NCBI GenBank assembly: GCA_002269645.1
Contig: NIVC01000434.1
Coordinates: 1-64,000, forward strand
DNA length: 64,000 nt
Origin: Macrostomum lignano
Lineage: Eukaryota
Reading direction: 5' to 3'
Part shown: positions 5,230-64,000 of the stretch, piece after piece
Numbering within the stretch: the first letter of the stretch is position 1
Layout of the letters: the number at the start of each line of letters is the position of its first letter
Position numbers and translations under genes: made by a program
Notes under the pieces: model-generated
What the model was told of the DNA's origin: nothing
The model's input: the letters and a program-made list of their open reading frames with translations, nothing else
The model's database searches: none

Positions 5230-5413
5230 TATCACTTATGAACATAAACTATAATCGGATACGGCTTGTAACTTGAATGACTTGTAACTTTTAGACTCAA
5301 AATTGACAGGTTGTTTCTTGAATCGCAATTACTTGTATCTTTTAGCTTGTCACTACTAATCAACTTGTAACTTGTAGCGTTGTTACTTGTAAGATATATC
5401 AGACACACCTCTG
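5230..5413 (-). mobile_element. Possible hAT element end with TTACAAG subterminal repeats
   Basis: Minus strand starts CAGAGGTGTGTC followed by several TTACAAG/ACAAGT repeats; the partner end was not found. Confidence 0.3.
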
Positions 5414-10316: not shown

Positions 10317-10348
<32 letters not shown>

Positions 10349-10360
10349 AGAGAGAGAGGG
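10317..10360 (+). repeat. (GA)n microsatellite
   Basis: Direct reading. Confidence 0.9.
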
Positions 10361-11245: not shown

Positions 11246-12316
<1,071 letters not shown>

Positions 12317-15360: not shown

Positions 15361-15890
15361 CAGGATGAGGTCAAAGTCAGGCTGGCTGTACACTACAGAA
15401 TCGGTAAAGAGAGGCACACAAGCAAATGCATGCATAATTTCAGCTGCCTCTGGGGGAGGCGGGAAGCAAATGGAACTCAGCTGAGAGCCAGGCACCCAGA
15501 TGCTAATCGGAACAAAAAATCGATTCAACCCTGCTCCGTTTCCCCTTCCCGAAGTCCCAAATGAAGCACTATTTAGATCCCCAAAATCTCCAGGTTTTTG
15601 GGGTTTGAAAATGGGGGTGTGGGTGGGATTAGGCCTTGCACTTAGCGGGCGTCAGATCTGCATAATCCGTTTGACTTAGGAGCGGCCTTGGTCTCAATTT
15701 TGTGTCTAGATTCCTTCCCCAGTCCGATCCCCTAAGAATAGATGCTCCTTTCGCAAAGCTGCATCCTATCCAGCTGTATAAAGACGTTATACAGCTCGGA
15801 ATCAAGAGTCGGCGGCTTTATTTTTTTCCGAAAATCAAATGCAAGTCAAGTGTCAAGCCGCATCTATTTTAGCATTTTTAGTATGGTGGA

Positions 15891-19634: not shown

Positions 19635-21956
19635 TCAAACAGCCGTGCTGTAGCCTTCATCGTCCTGCGCGTTTGGCTTGTGCTGACCTCCGCCGATGCG
19701 TTGCGCCATGGCGACAGCCGCGGCCTGCTGGGCGATGACGACCGGCTGCAGGGGCTGAGGATGCGGCGGCGGAGGCGGCGGTAGATCCACCGAGGCCAGC
19801 GAAACAGTGGCAGTGGCGGCGGAGCTGTTGACAACTGCTCCTTCTGGTATGCAATCGTCAACGTTGGATGCGCGCACGTAGGTCCCGCCTGACGGGCTGC
19901 AGATTGAAGCAGACGATGCCGGAAGTTGCTGCTGATGCTGTTGTTGCTGCTGATGCTGCATGCGCTGACGAAGCAACGCCGGATCGACAGGCGGTGGCGG
20001 TAGCGGAGGATTTCCGGATGTTGCTGCGGAGGTTGACGTTTTAGTGATGGTAGCGTACAGATCACCGTGCAAGGGGCACGGCTTGGCACCTGGCAGCGTG
20101 CCGTGCTGATGCTGGTGCTGGTGCTGCTGGTGCTGCTGCTGCTGCGGTGTGCCCGACCGGGAAGCCTCCTGTCCGTGCACGGGACACGGTGCACCAACGA
20201 ACTGTCTGGAACCGTGCACGGGACACTCTCCACACGGCCCGTGCTGGTGCTGATGCGGCAGAGTGCCACCACAGGCTGGACGGTTCACCGGCGATCGGAT
20301 GGTCACGTAGCCAGGTGGCTCGAATGAGAGCTCCGCCTGGTGTTGCTGCTGCTGCGAGTCTATAATCAGAGGATGCTGCTGTTGCTGCTGCTGGTATTGA
20401 ACTCTCTTCTTGCCGTCAATAGTAGTCGCTCCGCTTGTATAGCCATTCTCGCCCGCGACTTCAACCCCGACGACGCTACTGCCGACGCCGCGACCGCCGC
20501 CTCCGCCTGTGCGACTCTGCAGCTGGCTGTAGCTCGCCTGCTGCGCGTAGGACGGCGGGGCTTTCCTTCCACCGCCGGCCACTCCGACAGCGACCGCACT
20601 GCTACTACCGTTCGACCGCGGGCTATTCCTGGTGTAGTGGTAGAAAAACACGCCGCCAATCATTAGAGCGCAGGTGATCACAATCACAGCACCGATGCTG
20701 ACTACGGTAACTAGGCGCTTATTGAGCATAGCGGACTTTGTAGTATCAACAATCAGGCGGTGCTTGAGACTCGCTGAGCCGCGCTCGTTGTTCACTGCGC
20801 ACATGTAGACACCCTGGTCTTTCACCTGTACGCTGGTGATTGTTAGAGTAGCTTCAAAGTGGACGCTCTCCTTTGACTGCCACGGATGGTAGCCCTTCTG
20901 GTAGGTTATTCGAGTCGAAGGAGTGTTCTCTCCAAACAGCCATACAGTGTCGCCTTTGGGATCGCTGAAGAACTGGCAGCTCATGGTAACATTGCTCCCC
21001 TGCGGCACCTTGTGCTCTGTTTTAGTTCCCGCCGCAAACACCTGCGGCTTGCACTGGAACTGCGTGACTCGAGTTTGCCTATCAAATAGGCGCACGCCGA
21101 CCATGCCCGGGTAGCGAATCTCCGGATCTGGCGACGGGCCGGCGCAAGTTACTATGCCGGAAAATATCTCCTTCTCGCTGACCTTGGTCCTGTACCACTC
21201 CATGATCCAGCGCAGATGACAGTCGCACTCCCATTTATTACCGCCCATGCTTAAATTCCTGAGTGGCATTGCGCTGAGATCTTTTTGCATCAAGCCTGTG
21301 TTTGGCAGCGTCTTTAGATTGCAACTTCGCAGGTCCAGTTCTTTTAACCGGTTAAGGCCGCTGAATGCGCCCTCTTTAATGACCAGATCTGTTGTTCCTT
21401 GCAAGTCGAGAATTTCCAAAGTTTCTTTCTGCGCTTTGAAAAAGCCGTCGTCAAGTACAATTTGAAGGTTGCCCATGCGCAGTTCGCGAAGGTTGGTTAG
21501 CGGTTTAAGAAATAAATTGTTCGTAATGCGCAAATAGTTCTTTGATATTTTTAATTGTTGCAGTTTCTGCAGCGGCTTGAAAGCGCCTTCCGCGATGTCT
21601 TCAATAATGTTTTGCTCTAGATTGAGGAGCTCCAAATGCGGATAGTTAATAAAAGAGTTTTCGTGCAGATTCTTAATGCAGTTCTTCTCTAGTCTTAGCT
21701 CAAACAGCTCGTTGCCTCGAATGTCGGTTGGTACGTCGCTAAGTTCGCTGGAGGCGCAAATTGCTCGGGTGCGCACGCCCGACATGAGCTTCGAGCACAC
21801 GCTGCCCGAATTCGGGGCGCCGACCGTGCCGGAGCAATGAGACTGCTCCTGTCTGGCTGATATTACAGACTGCGCTATCGCTGACGCTTGCAGTGACAGC
21901 AGCAGCAGCAGCCACGCCAGCAGATGTGTCAGCAGGTACCGCTCCGTTGTAGACAT
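19635..21956 (-). CDS. Kekkon-like LRR + Ig single-pass transmembrane receptor (LIG family), 773 aa, intronless CDS
   Basis: Hydrophobic signal peptide (LLAWLLLLLSLQASA); LRRNT (C..CS...CASSELSDVP); 7 LRRs (LFELRLEKN, LELLNLEQN, LQQLKISKN, LRELRMGN, LEILDLQG, LKELDLRSC, LRNLSMGGN); LRRCT (NKWECDCHLRW...VTCAGP); one Ig domain (NVTMSCQ...W...LTITSVQVKDQGVYMCAVNN); TM helix (LVTVVSIGAVIVITCALMIGGVFFY); low-complexity tail ending DDEGYSTAV (class I PDZ-binding motif). The 7-LRR/1-Ig layout and terminal DEGY resemble Drosophila Kekkon proteins; orthology is not tested. Confidence 0.9.
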   Translation of the reverse strand: MSTTERYLLTHLLAWLLLLLSLQASAIAQSVISARQEQSHCSGTVGAPNSGSVCSKLMSGVRTRAICASSELSDVPTDIRGNELFELRLEKNCIKNLHENSFINYPHLELLNLEQNIIEDIAEGAFKPLQKLQQLKISKNYLRITNNLFLKPLTNLRELRMGNLQIVLDDGFFKAQKETLEILDLQGTTDLVIKEGAFSGLNRLKELDLRSCNLKTLPNTGLMQKDLSAMPLRNLSMGGNKWECDCHLRWIMEWYRTKVSEKEIFSGIVTCAGPSPDPEIRYPGMVGVRLFDRQTRVTQFQCKPQVFAAGTKTEHKVPQGSNVTMSCQFFSDPKGDTVWLFGENTPSTRITYQKGYHPWQSKESVHFEATLTITSVQVKDQGVYMCAVNNERGSASLKHRLIVDTTKSAMLNKRLVTVVSIGAVIVITCALMIGGVFFYHYTRNSPRSNGSSSAVAVGVAGGGRKAPPSYAQQASYSQLQSRTGGGGGRGVGSSVVGVEVAGENGYTSGATTIDGKKRVQYQQQQQQHPLIIDSQQQQHQAELSFEPPGYVTIRSPVNRPACGGTLPHQHQHGPCGECPVHGSRQFVGAPCPVHGQEASRSGTPQQQQHQQHQHQHQHGTLPGAKPCPLHGDLYATITKTSTSAATSGNPPLPPPPVDPALLRQRMQHQQQQQHQQQLPASSASICSPSGGTYVRASNVDDCIPEGAVVNSSAATATVSLASVDLPPPPPPHPQPLQPVVIAQQAAAVAMAQRIGGGQHKPNAQDDEGYSTAV

Positions 21957-23790: not shown

Positions 23791-25029
23791 CTAACTGCTT
23801 TTCATTCTTGTTCAAGTTTTCCTCGGCAATTTTAACGAAAAAAACTCCCGCTGACAGCCTCGTCCATAAAAACATATTTAGAGTCCCCAAAAGGAAAATA
23901 ACTCGCAATTTAAATAGTTTATTTTCATTGTTATAAGCGACGTTTTCTATTGTGGGAAGAATGGGAAGAGAAATTACAGCAGCTCATTCTTTGTTCTTTA
24001 CAGTAGTTGGAACTATTAAGAGTGTCGTTGCCATCAACACGGAGGGAACAAAGCTGGTGGCTGACAGGTTGGCTTAGTGTTGACTTTGCTGGTGTGAATT
24101 CTTCACTGCAGGGCGCGGATGGCGGGAGAGAGAGGGGAAAAAGTGAGGAACGAAAGGGGATCTCTCGGCATTCTTCCCTCGGAGGGCTACTGCTATAGGA
24201 TTACACTGAGCGTACTAAACTGCGCAAAATGAGAAACTAAGAGACAGATTTAACTTTCCTTTACTGTGCCTACCCTCTTGTACCTGTCTTTCTATCTGTC
24301 CTACTTTGACTACTTTTATAATATCCTATTTCTTTTCGTGCGGCGGTAAATACCCCAGACGTTGCTCTCCCTTCCTTCCTTCCTTCCTTCCGTGGTCTTT
24401 CCGTCCCAAAGTTGCTACCCTCTTTTTAAACGGCCTTTCCCCGGTCCAGGCTAAAATAAAAAGTAAACTCACTTCGCCCTCGTATAGGCCCTCTTGTTTC
24501 TACTTCTACATTTACCAGAGCCCATGTGAGAGCTGGAAACTATAAGAAAACTTTCTTCTGCACACTGAAGACTTTTTCCCTTCACTCTCGTTTTTTGCTG
24601 CTTTTAAAAAAGACTCGCAAATCGTTACTGCTGCCCGTATGCTCCGGCTGCGCTTACTCTACCCTCTAACCCTGCTTCTGTTCTGTGTTGACTTTTCTTC
24701 AGTTTTGCCCGCGGAAGTCGCATAATACCTTTTGGTAGATAGATTTGTTTGGCCTTCTACCGGACTGTCTTCCTCGCGACAGTTTCGCGTCGGGGTATTT
24801 TTTTAAACTAAAAGAGAAAAATCACGGGACCACGGCTGCCAGGGATTTCAGAAACGAATTGTCGGAGCACTTGCGCCAGATAGTGACTGTTGCTGCTTTG
24901 CTTTGCCGATGCTAAGATGCGAAGTTTATCTTACCATTCGCGAGGCCATTTCTATATTTGGTTTGTGCTTCAAAGATGGAGACTACGTTTTTTTCTATTT
25001 TAGTGAATAGAAAAGTTGAAGAAAGACAG

Positions 25030-26858
25030 GAGAGACGAGAGAGGCGAGGAGAGGAGAGGAGAGGAGAGGAGAGGAGGAGAGGAGAGGAGAGGAGAGGAGA
25101 GGAGAGGAGAGGAGGAGAGGAGAGGAGAGGAGAGGAGAGTAGAGGAGAGGAGGGAGAGTAGAGGAGAGGAGAGGAGAGGAGGAGAGGGGAGAGGAGAGGA
25201 GAGGAGAGGAGGAGAGGAGAGGAGAGGAGAGGAGAGGAGGAGAGGAGAGGAGAGGAGAGGAGAGGAGAGGAGGAGAGGAGAGGAGAGGAGAGGAGAGGAG
25301 AGGAGAGGAGAGGAGAGGAGGAGAGGAGAGGAGAGGAGAGGAGAGGAGAGTAGGAGAGTAGGGGAGAGGAGAGGAGAGGAGAGGAGAGGAGGAGAGAGGA
25401 GGAGAGGAGAGGAGAGGAGAGGAGAGGAGAGGAGGAGAGGAAAGGAGAGGAGAGGAGGAGAGGAAAGGAGAGGAGAGGAGGAGAGGAAAGGAGAGGAGAG
25501 GAGAGGAGAGAAGAGGAGAGTAGAAGAGAGGAGGGGAGAGTAGAGGAGAGGAGAGGAGAGTAGAGGAGAGGAGGGGAGAGGAGAGGAGATGAGACGAGGG
25601 AGAGGAGAGGAGAGGAGAGGAGAGGAGGGAGAAGAGAGGAGAGGAGAGGAGAGGAGGGGAGAGGAGAGGAGAGGAGAGGAGAGGAGAGGAGGAGAGGAAA
25701 GGAGAGGAGAGGAGAGGAGGAGAGGAAAGGAGAGGAGAGGAGAGGAGAGGAGAGGAGAGGAAAGGAGAGGAGAGGAGGAGAGAGAGAGGAGAGGAGAGGA
25801 GAGGAGGGGAGAGGAGAGGAGAGGAGAGGAGAGGAGAGGAGAGGAGGGGAGAGGAGAGGAGAGGAGAGGAGAGGAGAGGAGAGGAGGAGAGAAAGGAGAG
25901 GAGAGGAGAGGAGGAGAGGAAAGGAGAGGAGAGGAGAGGAGAGGAGAGGAGAGGAGAGGAAAGGAGAGGAGAGGAGGAGAGGAGAGGAGAGGAGAGGAGA
26001 GGAGAGGAGAGGAGAGGAAAGGAGAGGAGGAGAGAGGAGAGGAGAGGAGAGGAGAGGAGAGGAGAGGAGAGGAGAGGGAGGAGAGGAGGAGAGGAGAGGA
26101 GAGGAGAGGAGAGTAGAGGAGAGGAGGGGAGAGGAGAGGAGAGGAGAGGAGAGGAGGAGAGAGGAGGAGAGGAGAGAGAGAGGAGAGGAGAGGAGAGGAG
26201 GAGAGAGGAGGAGAGGAAAGGAGAGGAGAGGAGGAGAGGAAAGGAGAGGAGAGGAGGAGAGGAAAGGAGAGGAGAGGAGAGGAGAGAAGAGGAGAGTAGA
26301 AGAGAGGAGGGGAGAGTAGAGGAGAGGAGAGGAGAGGAGAGTAGAGGAGAGGAGGGGAGAGGAGAGGAGATGAGACGAGGGGAGAGGAGAGGAGAGGAGA
26401 GGAGAGGAGGGGAGAAGAGAGGAGAGGAGAGGAGAGGAGGGGAGAGGAGAGGAGAGGAGAGGAGAGGAGAGGAGGAGAGGAAAGGAGAGGAGAGGAGAGG
26501 AGGAGAGGAAAGGAGAGGAGAGGAGAGGAGAGGAGAGGAGGAGAGGAAAGGAGAGGAGAGGAGGAGAGGAGAGGAGAGGAGAGGAGAGGAGGGGAGAGGA
26601 GAGGAGAGGAGAGGAGAGGAGAGGAGAGGAGAGGAGGGGAGAGGAGAGAGAGGAGAGGAGAGGAGAGAGAGGAGGAGAGGAAAGGAGAGGAGAGAGAGAG
26701 GAGGAGAGGAAAGGAGAGGAGAGGAGAGGAGAGGAGAGGAGAGGAAAGGAGAGGAGAGGAGGAGAGGAGAGGAGAGGAGAGGAGAGGAGAGGAAAGGAGA
26801 GGAGAGGAGGAGAGGAGAGGAGAGGAGAGGAGAGGAGAGTAGAGTAGAGGAGAGAAGA
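25030..26858 (+). repeat. (GAGAG)n purine-rich satellite, about 1.8 kb
   Basis: Almost pure G/A on the plus strand; degenerate pentamer with a GAG variant. Confidence 0.97.
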
Positions 26859-27492
26859 GTTGATACTGAGTAAAAAATAGAAGACAAAGATGGAACAAGA
26901 GAAGGGCGCAGGAGAAAAAATCGTTGTATAAGAATAAGGACAACGCGACCTAACAATTACAATGGCAAATGCGATTTTTTCAGAAGATGATTCTATTTGA
27001 CTAAATAAACTCTGAGCTAGGCCTACCCGTATGCATTTTTGTTGTACTATTGCTACTCGTTATACTAAATAAAATGACTATGTACAGTATAAGTTGGCGG
27101 ACCCAAACCGAAAAAAATGATTGATGATTGGCGGACTAACTCTCTGAACTCCCCGCCCCATCTACATGTTCCCAGCGCTCTCTCTCTCTCTCTCCCTCTC
27201 TTTCTCTCTCTCCCTCTCTCTCGATTTTAACTTGCAACCCCGTTTGGCAGCAGAATTGGCGGCCTTACATGCATGTTGTTTTCTATGCAGAAGTAGCTGT
27301 TGGCGAGCCACGGATGGATCCGCTGTCAGTCGGGTAAAAACCCACTGAAACCGCCCACCCTGGGATCGACCTATTTCACTCAGTCTGTCACTGAGACTTC
27401 GGTTAGCAACTGAATGAGCTTATATCTAATTATTGCTTTTTAGTGACTTGGCTTTGTTTAGACAATTATATGCTCAATAGTAACATGAGTTC

Positions 27493-28792: not shown

Positions 28793-29499
28793 TATGTAAG
28801 CTCTATAGCATATAGTATTAGTAATCGTAATTCTGTCTTTTACAATTACGGAGGTTATTGAGTAAGTTTTCATTAGCAAAGTATTTACCTCTTTTCATTT
28901 ATTTCTATCACCAGGGAATTTATTAATTCGATTATTTATGAGGCTTCGTGCATTTTATTGATAGCCCTAGAGCCATTACGCAGTGCTTGTTTGTCATATA
29001 TTATTAGTGCTTACAATATTTAATAAATTCCATACTTTACGATGGACGATCGTGCAGACTTTTCGAAATTCGGTTCCCACGGTTTACGCCCAGTCTGTCT
29101 GTCTGCCCCCCCCCGTCTGTCTGTCTTGCCTTCACTGACCCCTCGGTTTGCCTATGAACCTAATCGCCACCCCCTCAAATATGAATGCATTTCGCATAGA
29201 TCTAATAACCCATCCCGCAGGGGTTACTTGATGTAGCTGGAAGATTTACGACATCCCGTTGGGAGTTTTGCTGTATAGCCTAGAGGCGCGTCGGCTACTT
29301 GTATGAACTATTATGATTATTATGATTATTATTATTATTATTATTAGTACCATTGCAATAGTAGGATTGTGGGCGAATTATGCTTATGCTATGCGAATTT
29401 TATAGTAGGAGACACTGTGGGATCAGATTATTTTGTTCGATTTTTCTACAATTCAAGGGAGTATTCGATTAGGACTTATGAGATACGAAAGTGGAAGTG

Positions 29500-30021
<522 letters not shown>

Positions 30022-30769
30022 GCATGAGTAATTTAGAAGTAGGGAGATTAAGGATTACATACACCAGTATAATTAAATCAGATCTAAACTATTTTCGTTT
30101 TTAACTTCAGGAATTTTATTATTAATCCCTAAAAACTATGCACATTGTAATTAATGATGTAAAACAATATAAAGTTACACGTAATCTCTATTTGCATCAT
30201 AATCAGTTGAATGCCTACTAGTATCGAGGACACGAGGATAGAGGTAGGACGCCATTAAAGCCCATCTATTGAAGATGTCGAACAGTGCTAGCGGTTTTAT
30301 ATGTAGCCTCCCCCATCCAAAAAAAGCGTCTGACCGACCGAATATGTAGCGAGTGGAGAGGTAAAGAGCGCGGAAAGGAAAGGAAGTCGAGGCGCTATGA
30401 GTCATTGATTCGGTTCATTCCATAGTTAGTTATTCAAGAGAAGTTATGAAAAGTTACAAACCAAAAATTTCGCAGTTAACAAGAATTTGAAAATCCAGGT
30501 ATGGATACTGACTCACCTCACCGGGGGTTTCTTCTGCTGTCGCCGAAGCAGCAACTGATAGTTGCTAGCGCGCACTCCTTCGAATACTGCTCCAAATTGG
30601 AATTTTCGAATAGAATTAGAAAAAAATCAACTTGCGGTGACAAAAAGATATTACACACCTCACACTTCAGCTTTTTCTGCTTATCAATGCAACGAAACTG
30701 AGTTAGAGAATCGATGCTAAGAGGCCAAGTTTGAAATTGGGAGAAAAATACGGTCTCAGCCTTCCAATA

Positions 30770-32856: not shown

Positions 32857-32964
32857 ATGTAAAAATATCCATCACATAATCTTGCCGAGCATTGCAATTC
32901 GTCCGACTTAGTCAAAGTTTTTGAAAACGGATTCGGAGATTGGAAAAAATTGGGGTCGACAAAA

Positions 32965-33652
32965 TTAGACAGAAACTTGATTACCAGATTAGACAGAAAC
33001 TTGATTACCAGATTAGACAGAAACGGTATTACCAGAATACCAGATTAGGCAGAAACTTGATAACCAGATTAGACAGAAACGGTAATTACAAGATTAGACA
33101 GAAACTGTATTACCAGACTAAACAAAAACGGTATTACCAGACTAGACAGAAACGGTATTACCAGATTAGACAGAAATGGTATTACCAGATTAGACAGAAA
33201 CTGTATTACCAGATTAGACAGAAACTGTATTACCAGATTAGACAGAAATGGTATTACCAGATTAGACAGAAACTGTATTACCAGATTAGACAGAAACGGT
33301 ATTACCAGATTAGACAAAAACGGTATTACCAGATTAGACAGAAACGGTATTACCAGATTAGACAGAAATTGTATTACCAGATTAGACAGAAACTGTATTA
33401 CCAGATTAGACAGAAACTTGATTACCAGATTAGACAGAAACTGTATTACCAGATTAGACAGAAACTGTATTACCAGATTAGACAGAAACTGTATTACCAG
33501 ATTAGACAGAAACTTGATTACCAGATTAGACAGAAACTGTATTACCAGATTAGACAGAAACTGTATTACCAGATTAGACAGAAACTGTATTACCAGATTA
33601 GACAGAAACTGTATTACCAGATTAGACAGAAACTGTATTACCAGATTAGACA
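32965..33652 (+). repeat. 24-bp minisatellite (ATTAGACAGAAACTGTATTACCAG)
   Basis: About 29 copies. Confidence 0.96.
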
Positions 33653-34267
33653 GTAACGGGATTACAGGACTGAGTCCACAGCACAGTGTCTTATAGTTGA
33701 TTCAAGAACGGCGAACAAAATGCTCATTTTAGTAACAGCTGCAGCTGCTGCTGGCAGTATGGCTGGCAAGTGACCGGGTGCATGTGAATTATTAAGCTCA
33801 GTATTAATCTCTTCCCATGTGTAAGCAAGTAAGAGACAAGCAATTCCTGTTGATACTCCTTCTTGGTCAATGCAGAGTTACCCAGAACGGCACAGCCAAA
33901 TTCTGAAGAACTGACTGCTTCAAAGTGTTCATTTGAACCAACTTCAAGCTAAGTGAAATGCATTTGCAGAGAATCCAAAATTAATGACTTGAAGAAGGAA
34001 GTACCTTTGCTATTCCCGCTCTCTATCGGTACTTTCCCAAATATCTACGTTGCTGCATCACTTGCGTCAGAATATCTGTGAAACTGAATATTATTATTGC
34101 TTTTCTACAAGATTGACACAAACTTCTGCCGCGAAAAAAAGAAGTTCGTAGTTCAAAAACTGGATCAACTGATGGCGCCTTGATATAGTACAGGGTAACG
34201 CAGATCTGCATGCATCTCTCTGAATTTGGGATATCGCTAAAATCGCTGCATTGAAGGCAGCCATAAG

Positions 34268-35048
<781 letters not shown>

Positions 35049-35566
35049 GCAGTTAGATAGATATGACGTCATGTTTAAAATTGCCGGAAGGCTGTATATA
35101 GCCATAGGACTTCGAATCCTGACGGCTTAAGCCGTTAGCTAAATAATTCAAGGACCAATAATCTTTCAGCTGCAGAGATTACGAGAATCTCCTCGGGCAA
35201 TAATTTACTGGGAGCTGCTTTGGTGCAATCTTCAAATTTTGACGAAATCGCCCGGAGGTTGAGTTTGGCAAAAAATCGACAGCTGATTGACACTGCAAGT
35301 GGGAGCCCGTGAGTGCCTCTGATTGGCGGTATTATGCAACGCCGTGAGACCTTCGCAGCCACTCGGAGGCAGAGCACTGACAAGGAATATTCTGTTGACC
35401 AGAAGAAATAAAAAAGTTTAAAGAGAAGAACGGTGGAATCAATGATGGTTTCCGGGTTTCTTATTGAATCTTGATTAAAGAAAGATTGGACAGGTGGATT
35501 GTAGACATAGGTTAGACGGAAACAGAGAGAGTGAATGTGGACAGAAAGGGTAGATGACGATATCCC

Positions 35567-38380: not shown

Positions 38381-53029
<14,649 letters not shown>

Positions 53030-54613: not shown

Positions 54614-54863
54614 CGGAACCTTCGTCTTGGAAGCGGCCTGTGTCCCCCCTTGCCCTCTAGCCCGCCGCCTGTTGGAGATGAGGGGGGGGTTGGTGTGTCG
54701 CATTTTAAACTCACCGAAATGCCGGGCTTTGCACCGGTTCAATTTGTTAGGATAAAACACAGAAGACCGTTGAAAGTTAATTAACGGCATAGTTTTTTTT
54801 CCAAAGAAGCGTTTGTTTTCTTCGTCAATAGCCAGCTGCCAGAGAAGCTTAAGCCAGTCCAGC

Positions 54864-56728
54864 ATGACCACGGTGCAGTACGGTGGCGGTCCAACCATCG
54901 AGCAGCGCAGGGCCTTCGTCAATCTCCGCCCTGGCTCCCACATCCCAGGCTACGCTGGCTTCAATCCCCAGTTGAAGTTCAACTCCGGCAAGACCTACGG
55001 CGAGCAGACCGCCGAGCTGTCCAAATCGTTTCCTCACAAGCGCATGGTCGACATCGGGGCCGCTCTGGACGCTCGCAAAGGCGGCGCCTCCGCCGCCTGC
55101 CAGCAAGGCGGAGTAGCCGAAGCTCAGGGACTTCGGCTGCCCAAGTCGACTGGCGACAACAAGTACATCGACGGCATGCTCCCCGGCTACACTGGCTACG
55201 TGCCAACTCTGATTAATCGATTCGGGGGCACCTATCGCAATCTGTGCGACGAGTCCGTGGACGAGTTCGTGCGCAACTACGAGCACCGGGAGGACAAAGC
55301 GACCGATTTGAAGCGCGCCTCTACCGCTTTTCCTCAGCTGGCGTCGCTGCGAGGCGATCCGGCGGTCAGGGACCACCTGAACTTCTGGGCCGATAGGAAG
55401 CCCAGGGCCGATGGAAAACGGCAGAATCTGGAGCCGCCAATTCCAGGATACCAGGTGAAACTGACTACGGACACTTGCTGTGATGCTTTGCGAGTAATGA
55501 TTCGATTCCCGTTTACTCAGATTTATGTCTGTTGAGACACTCTTATCTACGTAGAAGCACTTATCTCTCTACAGCGATTCGCAATCTCTTCAGTGGAAAT
55601 CCAAACGTTAAAAGAGTCATCTCGATCAGTATTCTTACAGACACCAATTAAAATCTTTACGGTGACACTCAGTCTTCACCAGAGACAATCCCATCTTCAC
55701 ACCAGAGACAACCCAATCCTCACCAGAGACACCCAATCTTCACCAGAGACACCTGATATTTACCAGAGACATCCCAATCTTCACCAGAGACAACCCAATC
55801 TTCACACCAGAGACAACCCAATCCTCACCAGAGACACCCAATCCTCACCAGAGACACCTGCTCTTTACCAGAGACATCCTAATCTTCACCAGAGACAACC
55901 CAATCTTCACACCAGAGACAACCCAATCCTCACCAGAGACAACCCAATCTTCACCAGAGACACCTGATCTTTATCAGAGACATCCCAATCTTCACCAGAG
56001 ACACCTGATCTTTACCAGAGACATCCCAATCTTCACCAGAGACACTTGATCTTCACCAGAGACGTCCCAATCTTCACCCAGACATCCTAATCTTCACCAG
56101 ACATCCTAATCTTCACCAGAGACACTCAATCTTCACCAGAAGCACACCAGTTTTTATAGAGACACCCAAACTTTACCAGAGAAACTTCACCAAATCTTCC
56201 ATAATCTACCCACCGCAATCTTCACAGACGCATCAATCTTCATTAGGACACCAATTTCCAAAGGGATACCTAAGTGTTCACCAAAGACACCCCGGCCCTG
56301 TGTTTACAGAGTCGCCCCAATATAAAGGGACTTTTCAAATTTTTAGCACTATAAAAACATCTTATAGTCTTACTGTCGATGCCTCAACCTTACAGGGCTA
56401 CGTTCCCCGAGTGTACACAACCCAAGCCGGCCTGGGCTGCCGCTATCACGAGATGACGCGCAACGGCTTGGAGATGTTCAATTCGGAGACCAAATCCGGG
56501 AGCGCCAGGGTTGCAACAGCCAGGCCGGCGTGCGGCCGCGAGCCGGTCGCCCTCGACGGCAACCGGGTGTACCAGCAGGAGGGCATGAAGCCGGCCTACA
56601 CTGGCTACGTGCCAAGGCGCAGGTTCAACTTCGGTCACACCTACGGCGAAACTACGCGCAACCTGCCAGTGTGTCAGCACTCCTATCCAACCTACGGAAA
56701 CTACGTCAGGTCGTTGACAGCTAATTGA
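54864..56728 (+). CDS. FAM166: FAM166 / CIMIP2 family ciliary microtubule inner protein, 307 aa, 2 exons (54864-55454, 56396-56728)
   Basis: Four PGY-type repeats typical of the family: IPGYAGFNPQLKFNSGKTYGE, LPGYTGYVPTLINRFGGTY, IPGYQ|GYVPRVYTTQAGLGCRY (joined across a phase-0 GT-AG intron) and PAYTGYVPRRRFNFGHTYGETT. The paralog (A/B/C) cannot be assigned. Confidence 0.88.
55672..56170 (+). repeat. About 21-bp repeat (CTTCACCAGAGACACCCAAT) with a 105-bp higher-order unit, FAM166 intron
   Basis: Five-monomer blocks repeat at a 105-bp period. Confidence 0.9.
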
Positions 56729-57244: not shown

Positions 57245-58263
57245 TGAGCTCATGAGTGAGTTTACGGGTGAGTTCATGAGTGAGGTTATGTGTGAGTTCA
57301 AGGGTAGTTTGTGAGTGAGTTCATGAGTGAGTTCATGGGTAAGTTCATGGGTGAGTTCATGAGTGAGTTCATGAGGGAGTTTATGGGTGAGTTCATGGGT
57401 GAGTCCATGGATGAGTTCGAGTTCATGGGTGAGTCCATGAGTGAGTTCAGGGGTGAGTTCATGGGTGAGTTCATGCGTCAGTTCATGGTGAGTTCATGAG
57501 AGAGTTCATAGATGAGTTCATGCGTGAGTTCATGGTGAGGTCAGGGGTGAGTTCATGAGTGAGTTCATGGTGAGGTCAGAGTTGAGTTCATGCGTGAGTT
57601 CAAGGGTAAGTTCATGAGTGAGTTCATGAGTGAGTTCATGAGGGAGTTTATGGGTGAGTTCATGGTGAGGTCAGGGGTGAGTTCATGAGTGAGGTTATGT
57701 GTGAGTTCAAGGGTAGTTTGTGAGTGAGTTCATGAGTGAATTCATGGGTAAGTTCATGGGTGAGTTCATGAGTGAGTTCATGAGGGAGTTTATGGGTGAG
57801 TTCATGGTGAGGTCAGGGGTGAGTTCATGAGTGAGTTCATGGTGAGGTCAGGGGTGAGTTCAAGGGTAAGTTCATGAGTGAGTTCATGAGTGAGTTCATG
57901 AGTGAGTTCATGAGGGAGTTTATGGGTGAGTTCATGGGTGAGTCCATGGATGAGTTCGAGTTCATGGGTGAGTCCATGAGTGAGTTCAGGGGTGAGTTCA
58001 TGGGTGAGTTCGAGTTCATGAGTGAGTTCATGAGTGAGTTCATGGGTGAGTTCATGGGTGAGTTCATGGGTGAGTTCATGGGTGAGTTCATGGGTGAGTT
58101 CATGGGTGAGTTCATGGGTGAGTTCATGGGTGAGTTCATGGGTGAGTTCATGGGTGAGTTCATGGGTGAGTGCAGGGGTGAGTTCATGAGTGAGTGCATG
58201 GGTGAGTTCATGAGTGAGTTCATGGGTGAGTTCGAGTTCATGGGTGAGTTCATGGGTGAGTTC
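57245..58263 (+). repeat. 12-bp repeat (GAGTTCATGGGT/GAGT)
   Basis: About 85 copies with internal block duplications. Confidence 0.96.
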
Positions 58264-58576
58264 ACGCGAGTGCTTTGCTGAACTATTTAAAAGCGGCAGA
58301 AGCTATTGACTCGAAAGCTAAAAGTTTCAATGCCTCCACTAAAGCTTTCACGTAGAATTTACGGAGAATATTTGAATAATGGATGCTTTTAGCTACCGCT
58401 TATAAACTCAAAAATATACAGCGAAATCGATTTTTCATACGCTCTTTCACCCCTGAGGAAAAGCATACGTGTCATTTCTTATATTTATTAAGGACATCAG
58501 TAGTATGATGCGGACATTTGAAATGAAATTCTACCGTGCTTATTGAAAATACCAACGAATAGATGCAAAATGTACT

Positions 58577-61500
58577 TCACTTTGATCTCTTTGTTGATTT
58601 GACGTGTTTCAATTCCTGGTAATATTTTGCACTTCGTTTTCGTTTAGCACTACGGCATGGCTGTTTGAACTCCTCCTGCCCTTGAATTGTGTTGGGCGTT
58701 GGGGGTGAATCCCGGAGATGCTTGGCCAGCGAATCCATTGCTGATCTGATCGACAGCGCGTGAAGCTGCGGCTGAAATCCGTACAAGGGTTGCCGTGTCA
58801 AGTATGCGATACATGTGATTTTATATTTTGTGACGGTGGCGCCCAACTAGTGGTTGTGAGTGGCGCCAAACAAGTGGTGATGGGTGGCGCCAAACAAATG
58901 GTGACGGGTGGCTCCCAACATGTGGTGACGGATGGCGCCCAACTAGTGGTGACGGGTGGCGCCAAACAAGTGGTGATGGGTGGCACAAAACAAATAGTGA
59001 CGGGTGGCGCCCAACAAGTGGCGACGGATGGCGCCCAACTAATGACGACGGATGGCGCCAAACTGTTACTGGGTTCATATTCTGTCTGGTGATTACCAAA
59101 TTTTGAGAAGCACAACCTTGACAATTAACCCCCTCGAGTCTCTCCTATCTGAGAATCAGTTTGAGCTCACCCTGGCTTCAATGAAGTTTACAACAGTTGA
59201 ATTCAGCATGGACTCGGTGATCAAGTCTCGATTCCTGTGCACAGCCTGCACCAGCAGTTGATCATCCTGTCCAGGTCGGTAGTAATGCAGCAGCATCAGC
59301 AGCTCCTGAGGATCTGAATCGCCATCCGCAGCGCTGGCAAACAGATCCGCGGCATTCCAGCGGTTTGAATACTCCAGCTGAATAGCCTTCATCAATGTGT
59401 CGAAGTTCATGTAGTAGCAATCGTCGTAGTTAACCAGGCGAGATGGAAACGCTTCCCGGATGTGGTTTGGCAGGAAGTTGAACACCGGATTGACATCGGT
59501 TTGCTTGAAGCTGAAGCTGAACTTCCACGCGGAGTCAGTCCGCTTCAGCTGCTTCCAGACAAACTGTTCAGCCTCTTCGACAGATGCCGGAGATACTTCT
59601 TCAGATTCTGCTTTCAAGTGGCCAGCAACTTTTCTGCTGACTGTGCTGGTCAACTGAGAAGCGCCCAAACGGTTGCCAACTTTGAGACTGGCCAGAGCCT
59701 TCAAGCACTCTCTGGTTGTCTTCGCGCTGTCAGGAATTCTATCGATGCTGCTCATTAACTGGGCGAGTTGAGTTCTCTTATCGAACTCAGCAAACAGTTG
59801 AACCGATGCTCTGTAAACTAGATCGTCAATTTGGTAGAACTTTATTTTACCAGCAGCAGGAATTTCCTGCTTTTTGGGCATCTGAAGTTCGGGAAGAAAC
59901 AGAAATGGATGAAACTCGATACTGCCAAGCTCAGTTGGGATTAAACCGAGCTCGAACTCCTCTAGCAGACTCGGCAAGTTCTCGATCACTAAGCGAACTT
60001 CCCGAGCTATGGTAGACTTTTCGTCGTGACCTTTGTGCAAATAGATCGCCGCGTCCTGAAGGAAGAAGTGGCGCATGCACTCCATCGAACTTGCCGATGG
60101 TTCGTGGAGCTGTCTGACTAAAATCGATAGCGACTCCTCAACAAGGCTGATGAGGTTCTCCGGCCTCTGCCACTCTTCATCGGGCGTCTTGTCCAGCATG
60201 TAGAACAGCAGGTTCTTGGCGTGGTAGCTCTTTAATCCCTTGACGCGTCGTCCAATGACTTTTTTAATCAGATATTTCAAAACGACAAAGACCTGGCCCT
60301 GCAGACTCGTTAGGCTCTGCATCAGCCTGCGTTCCAACAGATTCGTACTGACCCGCATCTGGTCGCCCGCCAACTCGGGAGGAGCTGCCGCGACCACGTG
60401 GCACCAAGCCAACTGTACTTCGTCTCGGAGAGCTTGCAGCACGCTAGGTCGTATTTGCGACACGTGACTGGTCTGGAGCAGCCAGATGGGTGGATAGGAA
60501 CAGCAGGGATAAGCTTTGACGTGATCCACCGCAGGCTTCAGTATGGTTCCAGCCTCTGGCACGCTGGGACTTGACACTGCAATTTGTACAGGTTTTTTCT
60601 GCATAGAATAAATTCGGTTTCTCATGCATATACATGTATATAGATATGGGGGCAGAGCAGATCAGCGGTAAACGCGTCCAACTCTTGCGTCACGACCCCT
60701 GGTTCGATTCCGTGGGCGGTTACATTAGTTTGGGGCTTGTGTACAAATAGTGATTGGCCTGGGAGGTCTTGCGATTCAAACTCGTGAGGGTCAACCACCA
60801 AGGCACAGAGAGTGTACATGACTAAAGATTAGAAATTCAGGGCCGCTGTACACCCTACGTGAGCTTGTGTATGAATTCGTGCCTGCGTACAGTATTGGCG
60901 AGCTCGTATGTGCTCAGGAGTCATCGGAATGGGCAGAATCGCCTCATCCCTGGTTGATGTCGTTGAAGGCGTTACGCCAAGATGCTTATAAACTTTCTAC
61001 GAACATTTCATTTATTTTATTTATACGACGCAGATACGAGTAGTAGAATGTAGAATATGCTTCGTGAAATTTTAAAGGTTAAGCGGAGTTTGGCTGCGGT
61101 TAGCTGAATGGGCTGCTTGCGTCTGTCTGAATCCGAGGTGCGATGGAAATACAATGAGGCAGTTTCATACAATTTTAACGGGTCAGGCATATTTTTTCTT
61201 CGATCTTTTCTGCTCTCACATGACTGCATCTTCACGGGGTGAATTAATTTGCCATAAAATATGATAAGATCCAAATGTAGCGACTTCTGCTCTCCTTCAG
61301 TACACCATGCACTCTTCGTTGTGTACTCTCTCGTGCAATTCAGTCTAGCCTTCTCTCTCTCACCCTTTCTTCACTCTGATTGGTCCTAACTTCGTCCCTC
61401 TTTAGCCTCTCGTTCCCACTCCAGCCCCTCCATTTCTTTTTTTGAGTTCTTCACCTTTCTCCTCCGAAGGAGGAGTTCCACTCGTTTCTAATAAAAATAA

Positions 61501-64000
61501 ACTGTTGTGGGCTTCGGCCTTCATCACTGACTCTACACTGACCCCTTCTGTTGCTAAAGTATTCTCTCAGCCTCCATGCTAGCTTTATTAATTATTTTTT
61601 TCGACACCAAGTGGAATGTATAACAACCTACCATGCACTTTATAATCGATGTGGCCATCCGAATACTGCACTGGGACACAGTCGGTCTTTGAGCACATTC
61701 CAATCGGTGTGCAGCCAATCAGATGAAACGGCGGCATCGCTTCGATGCACGTGAGGTCAATGTCCGAGCCGACCTCGATTCGTCCGTCCAGCCTTGACAA
61801 GCAGTTGCCCCAACCGTCTGCGTAGCTGCCAACGACAAAGTAGCCGGCCTGGTTCTTGCTTCTGATAATCTTTTGCAGTACCGCAGCGGCGCCGCTTTGC
61901 AGAACGGAGTTCTCCCGACTGAAGCCCGAGAGCAGAAGTGACTGATGCAGCCGGAGGCTGTGTTGGACTGTGCTTTCCAATCTGGAGAATTGTTTGAAAC
62001 TTGATTGCATAAATGTGTCTAAATTTGGCTTGGCTTCCTTTCTATTAAACAGGCCCTTCCTGTTCCGTGTAAATCGTATAAGTATTCGGAGGGCAGCAGA
62101 CACCCTGGCGCAACGCCTACGGTGATATCGTCCTGCAACAAGTGGTGAGGCAATTCTACCCAGTCCGCTGATTCCTGAGCACATACTGTACGCAGGCACG
62201 CACTCATACACACGCTCACACAGGGTGTACAGCAGCCCTTTGAGTTTCTGATTGTCAGGCATGTACAAGTCAGGGTGTGAATCGCAGGACAACTCCATTG
62301 GTCAAATTTCGTGCACACAAGCCGTAAATAAATGTGGCCACACACGGGATCGAACCAGGTGTCTGTGAGCGAGCGTCGGACCAAGGACAACTGTATATAG
62401 CTATATACAGTGGTCCTTGCGTCGGACGCGTTTACCGACTGCTGGTCCCCTCTTTTCCTGGTTCTGAGATTTCGGTAACTCACCGATGAACTGGCGGCAG
62501 GATGCTTCTTTTCATTGCTATAAATCTCTTGAACTCTTCAACGAAAACTTCAGAACCAGTTAGGCCTGACAAGTCGTTTAGGTCGCTTGAGTGCAACAAT
62601 TGCGACTCAGACAGGAAGGCGAGAACCTCAATCTGGCCCCTGTAGCACGCAAAAGCGAAGCACTTCAACTCGTCGAGGAGCATCCTGTTCCAATGTTGAC
62701 GCGTCCTACGGCGTGGATTTCTGCACGATCGAAGATAGTTCAGAACTCGAATGCACCCGTTTTGAGCAGCAAGCCACAGTGGTGACATGCCCACAGGGTC
62801 CAGGACATCAACGTTAACTCCGGCATCCAGCAGTTTGATTGCGGCTTCTTCCTGACGCATGTCGATAGCTAACACAAGCCAGCTGGTACCGGATGCGCTG
62901 ACGCGGTTCAGATCCGATCCGGCTTCAATCAGGGCGCCAATCACGCCAATATTTCCGGACCGCACCGCTATGCCTAGTGGAGTCAGATGGCCTTCGCCGA
63001 CTATGTTGAAATTCGCGCCGGCTTTGAGCAGCTGCAACGCTACCGCCAAGTGACCCTCGCGCGAGGCGATCCACAATGGGCTGCAACCGAAGCAATTGCA
63101 GTCGTCAGTTCGGGCTCCAGCCTTCAGAAGCAACTCGACTACGCGAGTGTGACCACCCTCGGAGGCGAAATAGAGTGCCGAGCAGCCCTCGAACCCAGAC
63201 TGATTCACATTCGCTCCAGACTTTAGCAGCTCACGAACACACTCAGCGTGACCTTCGAGTGAAGCGGATGTCAGTGGACTGTTGCCAATCGTGCTGAGCA
63301 CTTCCACTTTAGCTCTGTACTTCAGCAGCAGACGCGTGACCTTCAGATGTCCATTAGACACTGCAGCGTGTAATGGCGAACTGCCCATGTTATCGCAGCG
63401 ATCAACAGTGGCACCAGCCCTGAGTAGACGCAACACGGTGCTGACGTGTCCGTGATCTGCCGCCGTCCATAGAGGGGAAGCATCGGTGCAGTCTGCAAGT
63501 TCAATGTCCGCCCCAGCTCGAATGAGCTCGTCAACGACCTTGACGTGACCATTCTGGGCGGCGATCCACAGTGACGTGCTGCCGTCATTCATTGGAAGAT
63601 TCAGCAGAGCGACGCTGCACATTTCCGTTGAAAGCAGAAGCCGGACAAAGGACGCGTAACCGTTCTGGGCCGCAATATACAGAGGCGTGTAGCCATCTTC
63701 AGCTTGCTGGCTGATGTCAGCGCCAGCATTGATTAGCAGCGTCGCCACCTTCACGTGACCGTACTGCGCGGCAATGTGCATCGGCGACCAGCCCCTGTTC
63801 TCCGGTAGGTCGCAGTCCGCACCAGCGGCCAGCAACGCGGCTACTGTTGCCGTTCGACGGTTCTGAACCGCCACGTAGAGCGGCGTGGCGCCGAACTCTT
63901 GGCGCGGATTCAGCAGAGCTCCGGCGGAGATCAGCCGCTTGACAACGCGGACGTGACCGCGCCAAGCGGCTGCGCACAGCGGCGTCCAGCCGTTGCGCTG
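58577..64000 (-). CDS. Ankyrin-repeat + cGAS/Mab-21-like nucleotidyltransferase (candidate cGLR); 5' end lies beyond the window
   Basis: Exons on the minus strand: >64000-62484 (open to the window edge; at least 13 ankyrin repeats, e.g. GWTPLCAAAWRGHVRVVKRLISAGA, GYTPLYIAAQNG); 62041-61632 (NTase core VVGSYADGWG...GSDIDLT); 60576-59171 (AVDHVKAYPC, WCHVVA, MRVSTNLLERRL, VLKYL, LKSYHAKNLLFY, W, MRHFFL = Mab-21 C-terminal helical domain); 58771-58577 (basic tail, tentative). Junction phases 2/1/0 are all consistent with GT-AG. Confidence 0.88.
58842..59062 (+). repeat. 24-bp repeat (GGTGACGGGTGGCGCCCAACAAGT) in the last intron of the ANK-NTase gene
   Basis: About 9 degenerate copies. Confidence 0.88.
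60648..61024 (+). mobile_element. tRNA-derived SINE, copy A (fullest copy)
   Basis: GGGGGCAGAGCAGATCAGCGG A-box-like head, B-box GGTTCGATTCC at 60701, body shared with copies B and C (e.g. CCAAGGCACAG..GTGTACATG), T-rich tail tttattttattt. Confidence 0.75.
62095..62450 (-). mobile_element. tRNA-derived SINE, copy B (diverged; interrupted by a 38-bp insertion)
   Basis: Shares cggtaaacgcgtcc, cctggttcgatYccgtg, ggcttgtgt, tgcgattca, gctgtacaccct, gtgcctgcgtacagt, tatgtgctcagga and gcgttRcgcca, in order, with copy A. Confidence 0.72.
62382..62419. mobile_element. 38-bp palindromic micro-element (TIR-TIR) with 8-bp target-site duplication
   Basis: CAAGGACAACTGTATATAG|CTATATACAGTGGTCCTTG (19+19 nt, 1 mismatch), flanked by identical CGTCGGAC at 62374-62381 and 62420-62427. 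Confidence 0.8.

What the first reader, a model, noticed from the sequence alone, without database searches (positions are those of the whole stretch)
58577..64000. Ankyrin-repeat cGAS-like receptor (ANK-cGLR) with an apparently intact catalytic triad
Seen in sequence: three separately listed ORFs splice into one protein with at least 13 ankyrin repeats, an NTase core (GSYADG...SDIDL), a third acidic residue in AVDHVKAYPC, and a Mab-21 helical C-lobe (MRVSTNLLERRL, LKSYHAKNLLFY, MRHFFL). Established: cGAS/cGLR enzymes use a GS motif plus three acidic residues to make cyclic dinucleotides for STING signalling. Inference: this is an active second-messenger synthase with a large ankyrin array as ligand sensor or autoinhibitory cap, i.e. 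a candidate uncharacterised invertebrate pattern-recognition system. Ligand and product are unknown.
Basis: partly seen in the sequence, partly recalled or inferred. Interest (0 to 1): 0.85.

Follow-up and report, generated by a model that had tools for sequence, protein, structure and literature searches.

The report
Flatworm ankyrin-repeat cGAS-like receptor gene
This is a real, intact gene of the flatworm Macrostomum lignano that joins about 14 ankyrin repeats to a cGAS-like nucleotide-signal synthase with all catalytic residues in place, but this kind of fusion, including relatives from the same species, was already catalogued in 2023, so it is an uncharacterised member of a known family rather than a new system.

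Summary
On the minus strand, four exons (64000-62484, 62041-61632, 60576-59171, 58771-58577) join in frame through GT..AG introns. They encode 13 ankyrin repeats, a linker, a Mab-21/cGAS-type nucleotidyltransferase and a conserved ~265-aa C-terminal extension. The window end cuts off the 5' end, about 45 codons and one intron.

The DNA is 98.3% identical to two Macrostomum lignano GenBank contigs whose annotated 1218-aa protein has the same architecture.

Assignment to the cGLR family rests on four results:
- Pfam Mab-21_C scores above its threshold.
- A profile-profile alignment to Mab-21 proteins covers both lobes.
- The AlphaFold2 model (pLDDT 83.7) best matches oyster Cv-cGLR1 and cGAS.
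- GS, D-I-D and the third Asp align with cGAS G198/S199, E211/D213 and D307, and are kept in 43-47 of 48 diverged paralogs.

Li et al. 2023 already list ANK-cGLR fusions, including M. lignano ones. They screened five M. lignano catalytic domains (30-42% identical to this one), and none is flagged as active. Activity, ligand, product and receptor remain unknown. STING in this species was not tested. Moderate interest.

The parts
62484..64000 (-). Exon carrying 13 ankyrin repeats (about 62700-64000) and a ~70-aa linker. The frame is open to the window edge, so the gene continues 5' beyond 64000.
   Evidence: Translation is open from 64000. Pfam Ank_2 E 5.8e-92 and Ank E 2.5e-78. Donor CG|GTGAGT after 62484. 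The upstream exon is seen in the 98.3%-identical copy L001.
62042..62483 (-). Intron 1 (442 nt). An alternative acceptor makes it 61982-62483. It contains an interspersed repeat.
   Evidence: GT..AG ends. The annotated paralogous-copy protein P0001 reads PPVHR|LESTVQ, meaning the acceptor lies before 61981. Inverted repeat shared with intron 2.
61632..62041 (-). Exon with the N-terminal spine helices, strand beta1 with the GS motif, and strand beta2 with D-I-D (NTase N-lobe).
   Evidence: Spliced translation. AF2 secondary structure: H2-17, H22-42, E46-50, then E72-79. Profile alignments.
61825..61830 (-). Codons GGC AGC = G577 S578 of the spliced product (G51/S52 counting from LESTVQHS=1). 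This is the NTase GS motif.
   Evidence: Sequence read. Regex VV-GS-X20-DIDL-X56-VDH. Conserved 47/48. Aligned to cGAS G198/S199.
61756..61764 (-). Codons GAC ATT GAC = D599-I-D601 (D73/D75). These are the first two metal-binding acidic residues.
   Evidence: Sequence read. Conserved 46/48 and 44/48. Aligned to SD.D of Mab-21 proteins and to cGAS E211/D213.
60577..61631 (-). Intron 2 (1055 nt).
   Evidence: Donor ATG|GTAGGT and acceptor TTGCAG|TG in phase 1. Same junction as in P0001.
59171..60576 (-). Exon with the third-Asp strand, the nucleotide-binding RVSTxLLER and KSYHAK motifs, the Mab-21 C-lobe, and most of the family-specific C-terminal extension.
60524..60526 (-). Codon GAT = D660 (D134), the third catalytic Asp, in PAVDHVKA.
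   Evidence: Sequence read. Conserved 43/48, plus one Glu. Aligned with mouse cGAS D307 in ISVDIILAL.
59996..60295 (-). Mab-21_C (PF20266) helical C-lobe.
   Evidence: Pfam 29.3-30.1 bits against a gathering score of 24.1. PDB alignment to Cv-cGLR1 8gjy and cGAS over the same stretch.
58772..59170 (-). Intron 3 (399 nt), mostly a 24-nt minisatellite (58811-59088).
   Evidence: Donor AGG|GTGAGC and acceptor TTTCAG|CC. Repeat family D1. The junction is supported by paralog alignment (..ERPALRQR....AQPNLKHK..) and by P0001.
58577..58771 (-). Last coding exon: end of the C-terminal extension, a basic NLS-like tail, and the TGA stop at 58577-58579.
58484..58489 (-). AATAAA about 90 nt after the stop, a candidate polyadenylation signal.
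   Evidence: Read directly from the sequence. Not otherwise tested.

Best explanation
The window holds one copy of a Macrostomum lignano gene for a cytosolic ankyrin-repeat cGAS-like receptor (ANK-cGLR). It belongs to a large expansion that, in every member whose source could be read, is from this species.

Shown:
- One spliced reading frame encodes about 14 ankyrin repeats, a linker and a bilobed Mab-21/cGAS nucleotidyltransferase.
- GS, D-x-D and the third Asp, and the cGAS-type nucleotide-contacting motifs R-x-S...E and S-Y-H-x-K, are intact and under purifying selection.
- A ~265-aa helical extension appears to pack on the catalytic domain.

Inferred:
- The enzyme rests inactive. On ligand recognition it condenses two NTPs into a cyclic di- or oligonucleotide second messenger that activates a downstream receptor.
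- The core is not basic and carries large protein-interaction modules, so the trigger is more likely a protein or another non-nucleic-acid ligand. It would be read by the ankyrin array and/or the C-terminal extension, rather than dsDNA or dsRNA bound to the NTase spine.
- Product, ligand and receptor (STING or something else) are unknown.
For: Gene structure.
- Canonical in-frame junctions.
- Two of the three junctions and the overall architecture are identical in the GenBank-annotated 1218-aa product of two 98.3%-identical M. lignano contigs.
- The ANK + core architecture recurs in many paralogs.
- pN/pS is 0.38 between copies, with no internal stops.

Family.
- PF20266 scores above its gathering score.
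- Distant hits of the family profile carry PF03281 + PF20266.
- hhalign of the family against those proteins gives probability 100%, E 1.8e-42, over 303 columns of both lobes, with GS, SD.D and D in register.
- hhalign against mouse cGAS gives 93.5% (local) and 94.6% (global). D134 aligns with D307, RVSTNLLER with RLSFSHTEK, KSYHAK with CSYHVK, and GS/DID with GS/EFD.

Structure.
- The AF2 model has pLDDT 83.7 and pTM 0.87, with the NTase strand order.
- The Foldseek PDB top hits are Cv-cGLR1 8gjw (E 2e-7), many cGAS entries and MAB21L1, each over about 350 columns.

Active site.
- Conservation among 48 representatives that are at most 50% identical to each other: G 47, S 47, D 46, D 44, D 43.
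- The motif VVGS-X20-DIDL-X56-VDH fits the spacing of Li et al.'s criterion.

Ligand class. Core pI is 6.3, against above 8.5 for nucleic-acid-sensing cGLRs.
Against: - No biochemical or transcript data for this gene are available here.
- Five paralogous M. lignano catalytic domains were in Li et al.'s 140-protein screen with poly I:C and dsDNA. None is flagged as an active cGLR. Those constructs start shortly before the NTase core, so at least the three whose proteins carry Ank_2 in Table S2 (#89, #90, #93) were screened without their repeats.
- PF03281 does not hit the protein directly, and the residue before GS is Val, not Q/T.
- Other flatworms examined lack both cGAS and STING, so the canonical receptor may be absent.
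- The convergence of the three Asp side chains could not be measured, because model coordinates are not exposed. Only strand positions and alignments support it.
- The N-lobe part of the direct cGAS alignment has low per-column confidence.
Confidence: 0.6

Rival explanations
1. It is a non-catalytic Mab-21 scaffold. Like MAB21L1 or MiD49/51, the protein would keep the fold but act only by binding partners through the ankyrin array and the C-terminal extension, making no nucleotide signal.
For: MAB21L1 is among the Foldseek hits, only slightly weaker than cGAS. The five paralog domains in Li et al.'s screen are not flagged as active. Other flatworms lack STING.
Against: Non-catalytic Mab-21 proteins have lost the GS and Asp residues (Wu et al. 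2014). Here all five are present and kept in 43-47 of 48 diverged paralogs, together with the R-x-S...E and SYHxK nucleotide-contact motifs.
Confidence: 0.15
2. It is an active nucleotidyltransferase with different chemistry. It would make linear 2'-5' or 3'-5' oligonucleotides (OAS-like), or nucleotidylate a protein or RNA held by the ankyrin array, rather than make a cyclic dinucleotide for STING.
For: The active site is intact but the product is unknown. The clade is very divergent: PF03281 is missed, there is a short 56-residue insert between D-x-D and the third Asp, and there are extra conserved Cys/His residues. STING may be absent.
Against: The nearest structures and profiles are cGLR/cGAS. 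No OAS or poly(A)-polymerase/TUTase entry is in the 50 best Foldseek PDB matches listed, and no such family appears in Pfam at E up to 10.
Confidence: 0.15
3. It is a decaying duplicate. This copy would be one of several near-identical copies in a duplicated genome and no longer functional.
For: At least three copies exist at about 98% nucleotide identity. The surroundings are repeat-rich and the introns are filled with repeats.
Against: There is no frameshift or internal stop in 3528 nt. All splice sites are canonical, and pN/pS is 0.38 against the other copies.
Confidence: 0.05
4. It is a gene-model artefact. The ankyrin exon would belong to a separate upstream gene and the NTase would start at its own promoter inside 'intron 1'.
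For: No transcript data were available here. Several database relatives are NTase-only proteins of 560-640 aa (P0002, P0004, P0007, P0009).
Against: The ankyrin frame ends exactly at a consensus donor in the phase needed by the next exon. No Met-initiated frame precedes the NTase exon except repeat-derived sequence. Dozens of paralogs, from two independent annotations, have ANK directly N-terminal to the core. Li et al. Table S2 lists Ank_2 on the same M. lignano proteins.
Confidence: 0.04

Closest known systems
Macrostomum lignano cGLRs catalogued and screened by Li et al. 2023 (PAA57558.1, PAA86972.1, PAA45980.1, PAA93208.1, PAA68676.1; Ank_2-bearing entries in Table S2)
   Same: They come from the same species and clade. 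They are 30-42% identical over about 350-410 aa (E 1e-46 to 1e-82). They share the motifs GS[FY]xxGW[GA], SD[IV]D, RVSTxLLER, GLK[ST]YHAK and CMxHFF, and several have N-terminal ankyrin repeats.
   Different: This is a different paralog. Whether this exact protein is in their Table S1 could not be checked. Their constructs start shortly before the NTase core, so those from the ankyrin-bearing proteins omit the array. No activity, ligand or product is reported for any of them.
Crassostrea virginica Cv-cGLR1 (PDB 8GJW/8GJY) and vertebrate cGAS
   Same: The bilobed NTase + helical C-lobe fold is shared: Foldseek E 2e-7 to 1e-5, TM about 0.5-0.58 normalised by the target. The catalytic residues are aligned, as are the R-x-S...E and SYHxK motifs.
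   Different: Sequence identity is only 12-16%. The window protein has no cGAS Zn-ribbon insert and a shorter N-lobe insert. Its core is slightly acidic rather than basic (pI 6.3). It also has about 14 N-terminal ankyrin repeats and a ~265-aa C-terminal extension, which the catalytic-domain structures of Cv-cGLR1 and cGAS (about 340-360 residues) do not include.
TPR-fused Mab-21 proteins found by the family profile (unnamed ENA/Logan assemblies; TPR-fused cGLRs are also described by Li et al. 2023)
   Same: They are the closest non-Macrostomum relatives found by the family profile (E 1e-16 to 1e-10). They carry PF03281 + PF20266, and some have a repeat-module fusion (TPR, C-terminal).
   Different: The repeat type and position differ (C-terminal TPR against N-terminal ANK). 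They lack the Macrostomum-type C-terminal extension. Their source organisms are not named in the library.
MAB21L1 (PDB 5EOM/5EOG)
   Same: It has the same fold (Foldseek E about 1e-5).
   Different: MAB21L1 lacks the GS and most acidic catalytic residues (Wu et al. 2014). The window protein keeps all of them.

Membership tests
cGLR (criteria of Li et al. 2023) | Active-site motif h[QT]GS-X8-20-[DE]h[DE]h-X50-90-h[DE]h | tested here: met
   The protein has VVGS-X20-DIDL-X56-VDH. GS, both spacings and all three acidic residues fit. There are two minor deviations: Val instead of Q/T before GS, and His as the last 'h'. The five M. lignano proteins that Li et al. accepted show similar deviations from [QT] before GS (M, L, F in three of them).
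cGLR (criteria of Li et al. 2023) | [quoted passage not shown] | tested here: met
   For the C-lobe, PF20266 scores 29-30 bits, above the gathering score of 24.1. For both lobes, hhalign of the 48-sequence family profile against PF03281/PF20266-bearing proteins gives probability 100%, E 1.8e-42, over 303 columns. Against mouse cGAS it gives 93.5-94.6%. Caveat: PF03281 itself does not hit the protein directly.
cGLR (criteria of Li et al. 2023) | AlphaFold2 model structurally homologous to known cGLR/CD-NTase enzymes | tested here: met
   The model has pLDDT 83.7 and pTM 0.87. The Foldseek PDB top hits are Cv-cGLR1, cGAS and MAB21L1 at probability 1.00 over 340-400 columns.
cGLR | The three acidic side chains converge on one two-metal site | tested here: inconclusive
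   D599/D601 lie on model strand E72-79 and D660 on E132-141, as in the NTase fold, and they align to cGAS E211/D213/D307. Coordinates are not exposed, so distances could not be measured.
cGLR | Ligand-dependent synthesis of a nucleotide second messenger | not testable with these tools
   This needs biochemistry. Five paralog catalytic domains in Li et al.'s screen carry no 'active' note.
cGLR-STING pathway | A STING (TMEM173) receptor encoded in the same genome | not tested
   No searchable M. lignano genome or proteome was available for a TMEM173 profile, and the word-indexed protein search would be too insensitive. Schistosoma, Schmidtea and several cestodes lack STING. M. lignano is not in Li et al.'s Table S5.
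Ankyrin-repeat proteins | Tandem ~33-residue ANK repeats recognised by Pfam | tested here: met
   Ank_2 E 5.8e-92, Ank E 2.5e-78 (10 stretches), and Ank_3/4/5. Thirteen repeats can be read in the translation, plus one more in the upstream exon of the near-identical copy.
Poly(A)-polymerase/TUTase (Cid1-type) or OAS nucleotidyltransferases | PAP/NTP_transf_2 + PAP-associated domain, or the OAS1_C domain and fold | tested here: not met
   No such Pfam family appears at E up to 10. None is among the 50 best Foldseek PDB matches listed. The GSxxxG...SDIDL resemblance to TUTases is limited to the generic Pol-beta motif.

The most novel reading that the evidence does not exclude
Macrostomum would run an orphan, STING-independent cGLR signalling system. 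A lineage-specific repertoire of dozens of ANK-cGLRs would use diversified ankyrin arrays, together with a family-specific C-terminal domain of unknown fold, to recognise protein or other non-nucleic-acid ligands. They would signal through an unknown nucleotide product to a non-STING receptor, in a phylum otherwise thought to have lost cGAS-STING immunity.
Probability: 0.15. Interest if true: 0.75.

Novelty: new member of a known kind. Interest (0 to 1): 0.38.

Why it matters
cGLRs are a major family of animal pattern-recognition receptors, yet most are orphans with no known ligand. The parasitic flatworms and planarians examined have lost cGAS and STING. M. lignano, by contrast, carries a very large expansion of ANK-fused cGLRs: 79 clusters at 50% identity score E<=1e-30 against the family profile. 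Their active sites are conserved and their cores are not basic.

If these enzymes are active, they are good candidates for sensing non-nucleic-acid ligands and possibly for a non-STING receptor. RNAi and transgenesis are available in this model animal (from my own knowledge; not checked here).

The practical point for this gene is that the published screen used constructs that begin just before the NTase core. For the ankyrin-bearing paralogs this removed the repeats, so full-length protein has not been tested.

Tried and rejected
- Direct Pfam PF03281 match: none, even at E up to 10. The N-lobe had to be linked through profile-profile alignment instead.
- Single-sequence and 7-sequence profile searches of PDB sequences: only weak C-lobe hits (E 0.007-0.03) plus spurious TRPM2 and Lon hits.
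- Word-indexed homolog search with the profile: only a few more M. lignano proteins.
- C-terminal extension modelled alone: pLDDT 67.8, with no Foldseek PDB match at E<=0.001. There was no Pfam hit either, so its fold and function stay unknown.
- tRNA-derived SINE in introns 1 and 2: I suspected this by eye. ARAGORN and Rfam found nothing, so it is only an unclassified interspersed repeat.
- Tandem paralogs or a STING gene in the window: none. The only tblastn hits are the gene itself, and the neighbours are unrelated.
- Literature on Macrostomum STING or cGLR function: nothing beyond Li et al. 2023.
- Searching for STING with the last word-indexed protein search: considered and not run. A flatworm STING at about 25-30% identity would share almost no exact 5-mers with any query I could supply, so a negative would mean nothing.
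- TUTase/PAP and OAS assignments: rejected.

Full report
**Observation.** The last 5.4 kb of the window holds, on the minus strand, four open stretches that join into one reading frame.
- The ankyrin frame is open from the window edge (64000) down to 62484.
- It ends at a CG|GTGAGT donor in the phase needed by the next exon.
- Joining 64000-62484, 62041-61632, 60576-59171 and 58771-58577 gives 3528 nt: 1175 codons plus TGA. All three introns have GT..AG ends.
- Thirteen ankyrin repeats can be read in the translation. Pfam scores them at E 5.8e-92 (Ank_2) and 2.5e-78 (Ank).

**Source and gene model.**
- The closest database protein, P0001 (1218 aa), has the same architecture.
- It is encoded on two contigs of the Macrostomum lignano assembly GCA_002269645.1.
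- The window is 98.3% identical to both contigs over 5.1 kb including introns. It is therefore M. lignano, as a further copy or haplotype.
- The coding sequence differs at 29 of 3528 positions (13 synonymous, 16 non-synonymous; pN/pS 0.38) and has no internal stop.
For intron 1 it uses an acceptor 60 nt further 3', so the exon starts at 61981 and 20 residues are skipped. Both acceptors are in phase, and only transcript data can decide between them.
- The third junction is also supported by paralog alignment across it.
- In the near-identical copy, an upstream exon (first in-frame Met: MHETNRSSDRK...) and one more intron lie just beyond window position 64000. About 45 codons and one more ankyrin repeat are therefore missing from the window.
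- The same CMI2B-like neighbour lies downstream in the window and in both contigs.

**What the non-ankyrin part is.**
- Pfam finds only Mab-21_C (PF20266, 29-30 bits, gathering score 24.1). PF03281 is not hit.
- PDB sequence searches give only weak C-lobe matches to Cv-cGLR1 and cGAS.
- A profile of seven paralogs, searched against 1.84 billion representatives, found 667 proteins at E<=1e-3 and 79 at E<=1e-30.
- Every close member whose source could be read is from M. lignano. Most are 900-1400 aa, with the match starting near residue 500-600 and ankyrin-like motifs in front.
- Nine of the ten more distant hits scanned carry PF20266 and eight also PF03281, all above gathering score. Some have C-terminal TPRs.
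- A profile-profile alignment of 48 family members against 32 of these Mab-21 proteins gives probability 100% and E 1.8e-42 over 303 columns of both lobes. GS aligns on GS, SDID on SD.D, and the third Asp on Asp.
- Against the mouse cGAS catalytic domain (sequence from Li et al. Table S3), the family profile gives 93.5% locally. D134 aligns on D307, RVSTNLLER on RLSFSHTEK, and KSYHAK on CSYHVK.
- The global alignment gives 94.6%. It also puts G51/S52 on G198/S199 and D73/D75 on E211/D213, though with low column confidence in the N-lobe.

**Structure.**
- AlphaFold2 on the 606-aa non-ankyrin part, with a 13-sequence alignment, gave mean pLDDT 83.7 and pTM 0.87.
- The order of elements is that of an NTase: two long helices, a strand ending in GS, a strand carrying D-I-D, and a later strand carrying the third Asp.
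- Foldseek against the PDB returns Cv-cGLR1 (8gjw, E 2e-7), dozens of cGAS entries and MAB21L1. All have probability 1.00, cover about 340-400 columns, and have TM about 0.5-0.58 normalised by the target.
- Coordinates are not exposed, so I could not measure whether the three carboxylates converge.

**Active-site conservation.** Among 48 cluster representatives that are at most 50% identical to each other, G is kept in 47, S in 47, the first Asp in 46 (plus one Glu), the second in 44, and the third in 43 (plus one Glu). The R, S, E, Y and K of the nucleotide-contact motifs are kept in 44-48. This pattern is not expected for a Mab-21 scaffold that has lost catalysis. [quoted passage not shown] 2014).

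**Other parts.**
- The ~265-aa region after the C-lobe is conserved in the family (IPDxARTxRECLRA, DSAWKF, NFDALxKA). In the representative hits whose match layout was inspected, it is found together with the core.
- It is well modelled only in the context of the catalytic domain: block pLDDT is mostly 80-90 there, against 67.8 when modelled alone.
- It has no Pfam or Foldseek match.
- The catalytic core has pI 6.3 and the extension 6.4.
- Li et al. report that dsDNA- and dsRNA-sensing cGLRs have pI above 8.5, and that acidic ones probably sense non-nucleic-acid ligands.
- Six Cys/His positions in the N-lobe are conserved and could form a metal site. This is untested.

**What is already known.**
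- Li et al. 2023 (PMC9980059; published in Cell) defined cGLRs by three criteria: motif, homology over two lobes, and an AF2 model. This protein meets all three.
- They state that some cGLRs carry TPR or ankyrin modules, and that most platyhelminths have none.
- Their Table S2 lists M. lignano accessions with Ank_2 domains.
- Their Table S3 lists five M. lignano catalytic-domain constructs, numbers 89-93. These are 30-42% identical to the window protein.
- The 'Note' field, which names the characterised enzymes in other rows, is empty for all five, and the species is not mentioned in the main text. The TLC images could not be read.
- Those constructs begin shortly before the NTase core, so those made from the ankyrin-bearing proteins omit the array.
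- Schistosoma, Schmidtea and several cestodes lack both cGAS and STING.
- Whether M. lignano has STING could not be tested here.

**Verdict.** The sequence observation is confirmed, and the identification as an ankyrin-repeat cGLR with an intact catalytic motif is well supported. The claim that it is an active second-messenger synthase is plausible, given strong active-site conservation, but unproven. The role of the ankyrin array is inference only. The architecture and the clade are already in the literature, so this is a new, uncharacterised member of a known kind. What remains interesting is the very large expansion in a flatworm, the non-basic core, the unknown C-terminal domain, and the open question of the receptor.

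Noticed in passing
window 19635-21956 (-): A single 773-aa ORF encodes a leucine-rich-repeat (LRR_8) plus immunoglobulin-domain protein. It has a hydrophobic N-terminal leader, a hydrophobic segment after the Ig domain, and a long Gln/His/Pro-rich tail. It looks like an LRR-Ig cell-surface receptor gene without introns.
   Followed up: partly
window 54813-55535 (+): An exon of a CMI2B-like ciliary microtubule inner protein (PF10629, E 1.7e-15). The same gene lies next to the cGLR gene in both GenBank contigs, so synteny is conserved between the copies.
   Followed up: partly
window 41464-41700 (+) and 50360-50941 (+): A P-loop 'GISGSGKT' exon and a myosin-head C-terminal fragment (PF00063, 32.4 bits, just under the 33.3 gathering score). 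Together they suggest a myosin-like gene spread over about 10 kb and interrupted by satellites.
   Followed up: partly
window about 4000-15500, 25000-27000, 29400-30100, 32900-35100, 41700-48400, 57300-58300: Very dense micro- and minisatellite arrays produce long spurious ORFs on both strands (SIYL, SPQCP, SPLL, GEERR repeats and similar) and strong GC/AT skew blocks.
   Followed up: no
window 58811-59088; 60676-60956 and 62136-62239: Intron 3 of the cGLR gene is mostly a 24-nt minisatellite. Introns 1 and 2 carry inverted copies (75-89% identical) of one interspersed repeat. It looked tRNA-like by eye but has no ARAGORN or Rfam match. The N-terminal part of the listed ORF 61588-62298 is this repeat read in frame, not coding sequence.
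   Followed up: yes
window 61632-61981 and 60400-60576 (-), NTase N-lobe: Six Cys/His positions (H86, C96, H110, C142, C175, H176, counting from LESTVQHS=1) are kept in 38-46 of 48 diverged paralogs. They could form a family-specific zinc site, distinct from the cGAS Zn-ribbon.
   Followed up: partly
window 58577-59890 (-): A ~265-aa C-terminal extension is conserved across the family and has no Pfam or PDB fold match. It ends in a basic tail, RSAKRKRSAKYYQELKHVKSTKRSK (pI 10.4), that resembles a nuclear localisation signal.
   Followed up: partly
protein P0013 (M. lignano, 1346 aa): It contains two complete copies of the cGLR core plus extension in tandem (profile matches at 19-585 and 763-1325). 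This is either a multi-cGLR fusion of the kind Li et al. describe or a merged gene model.
   Followed up: no
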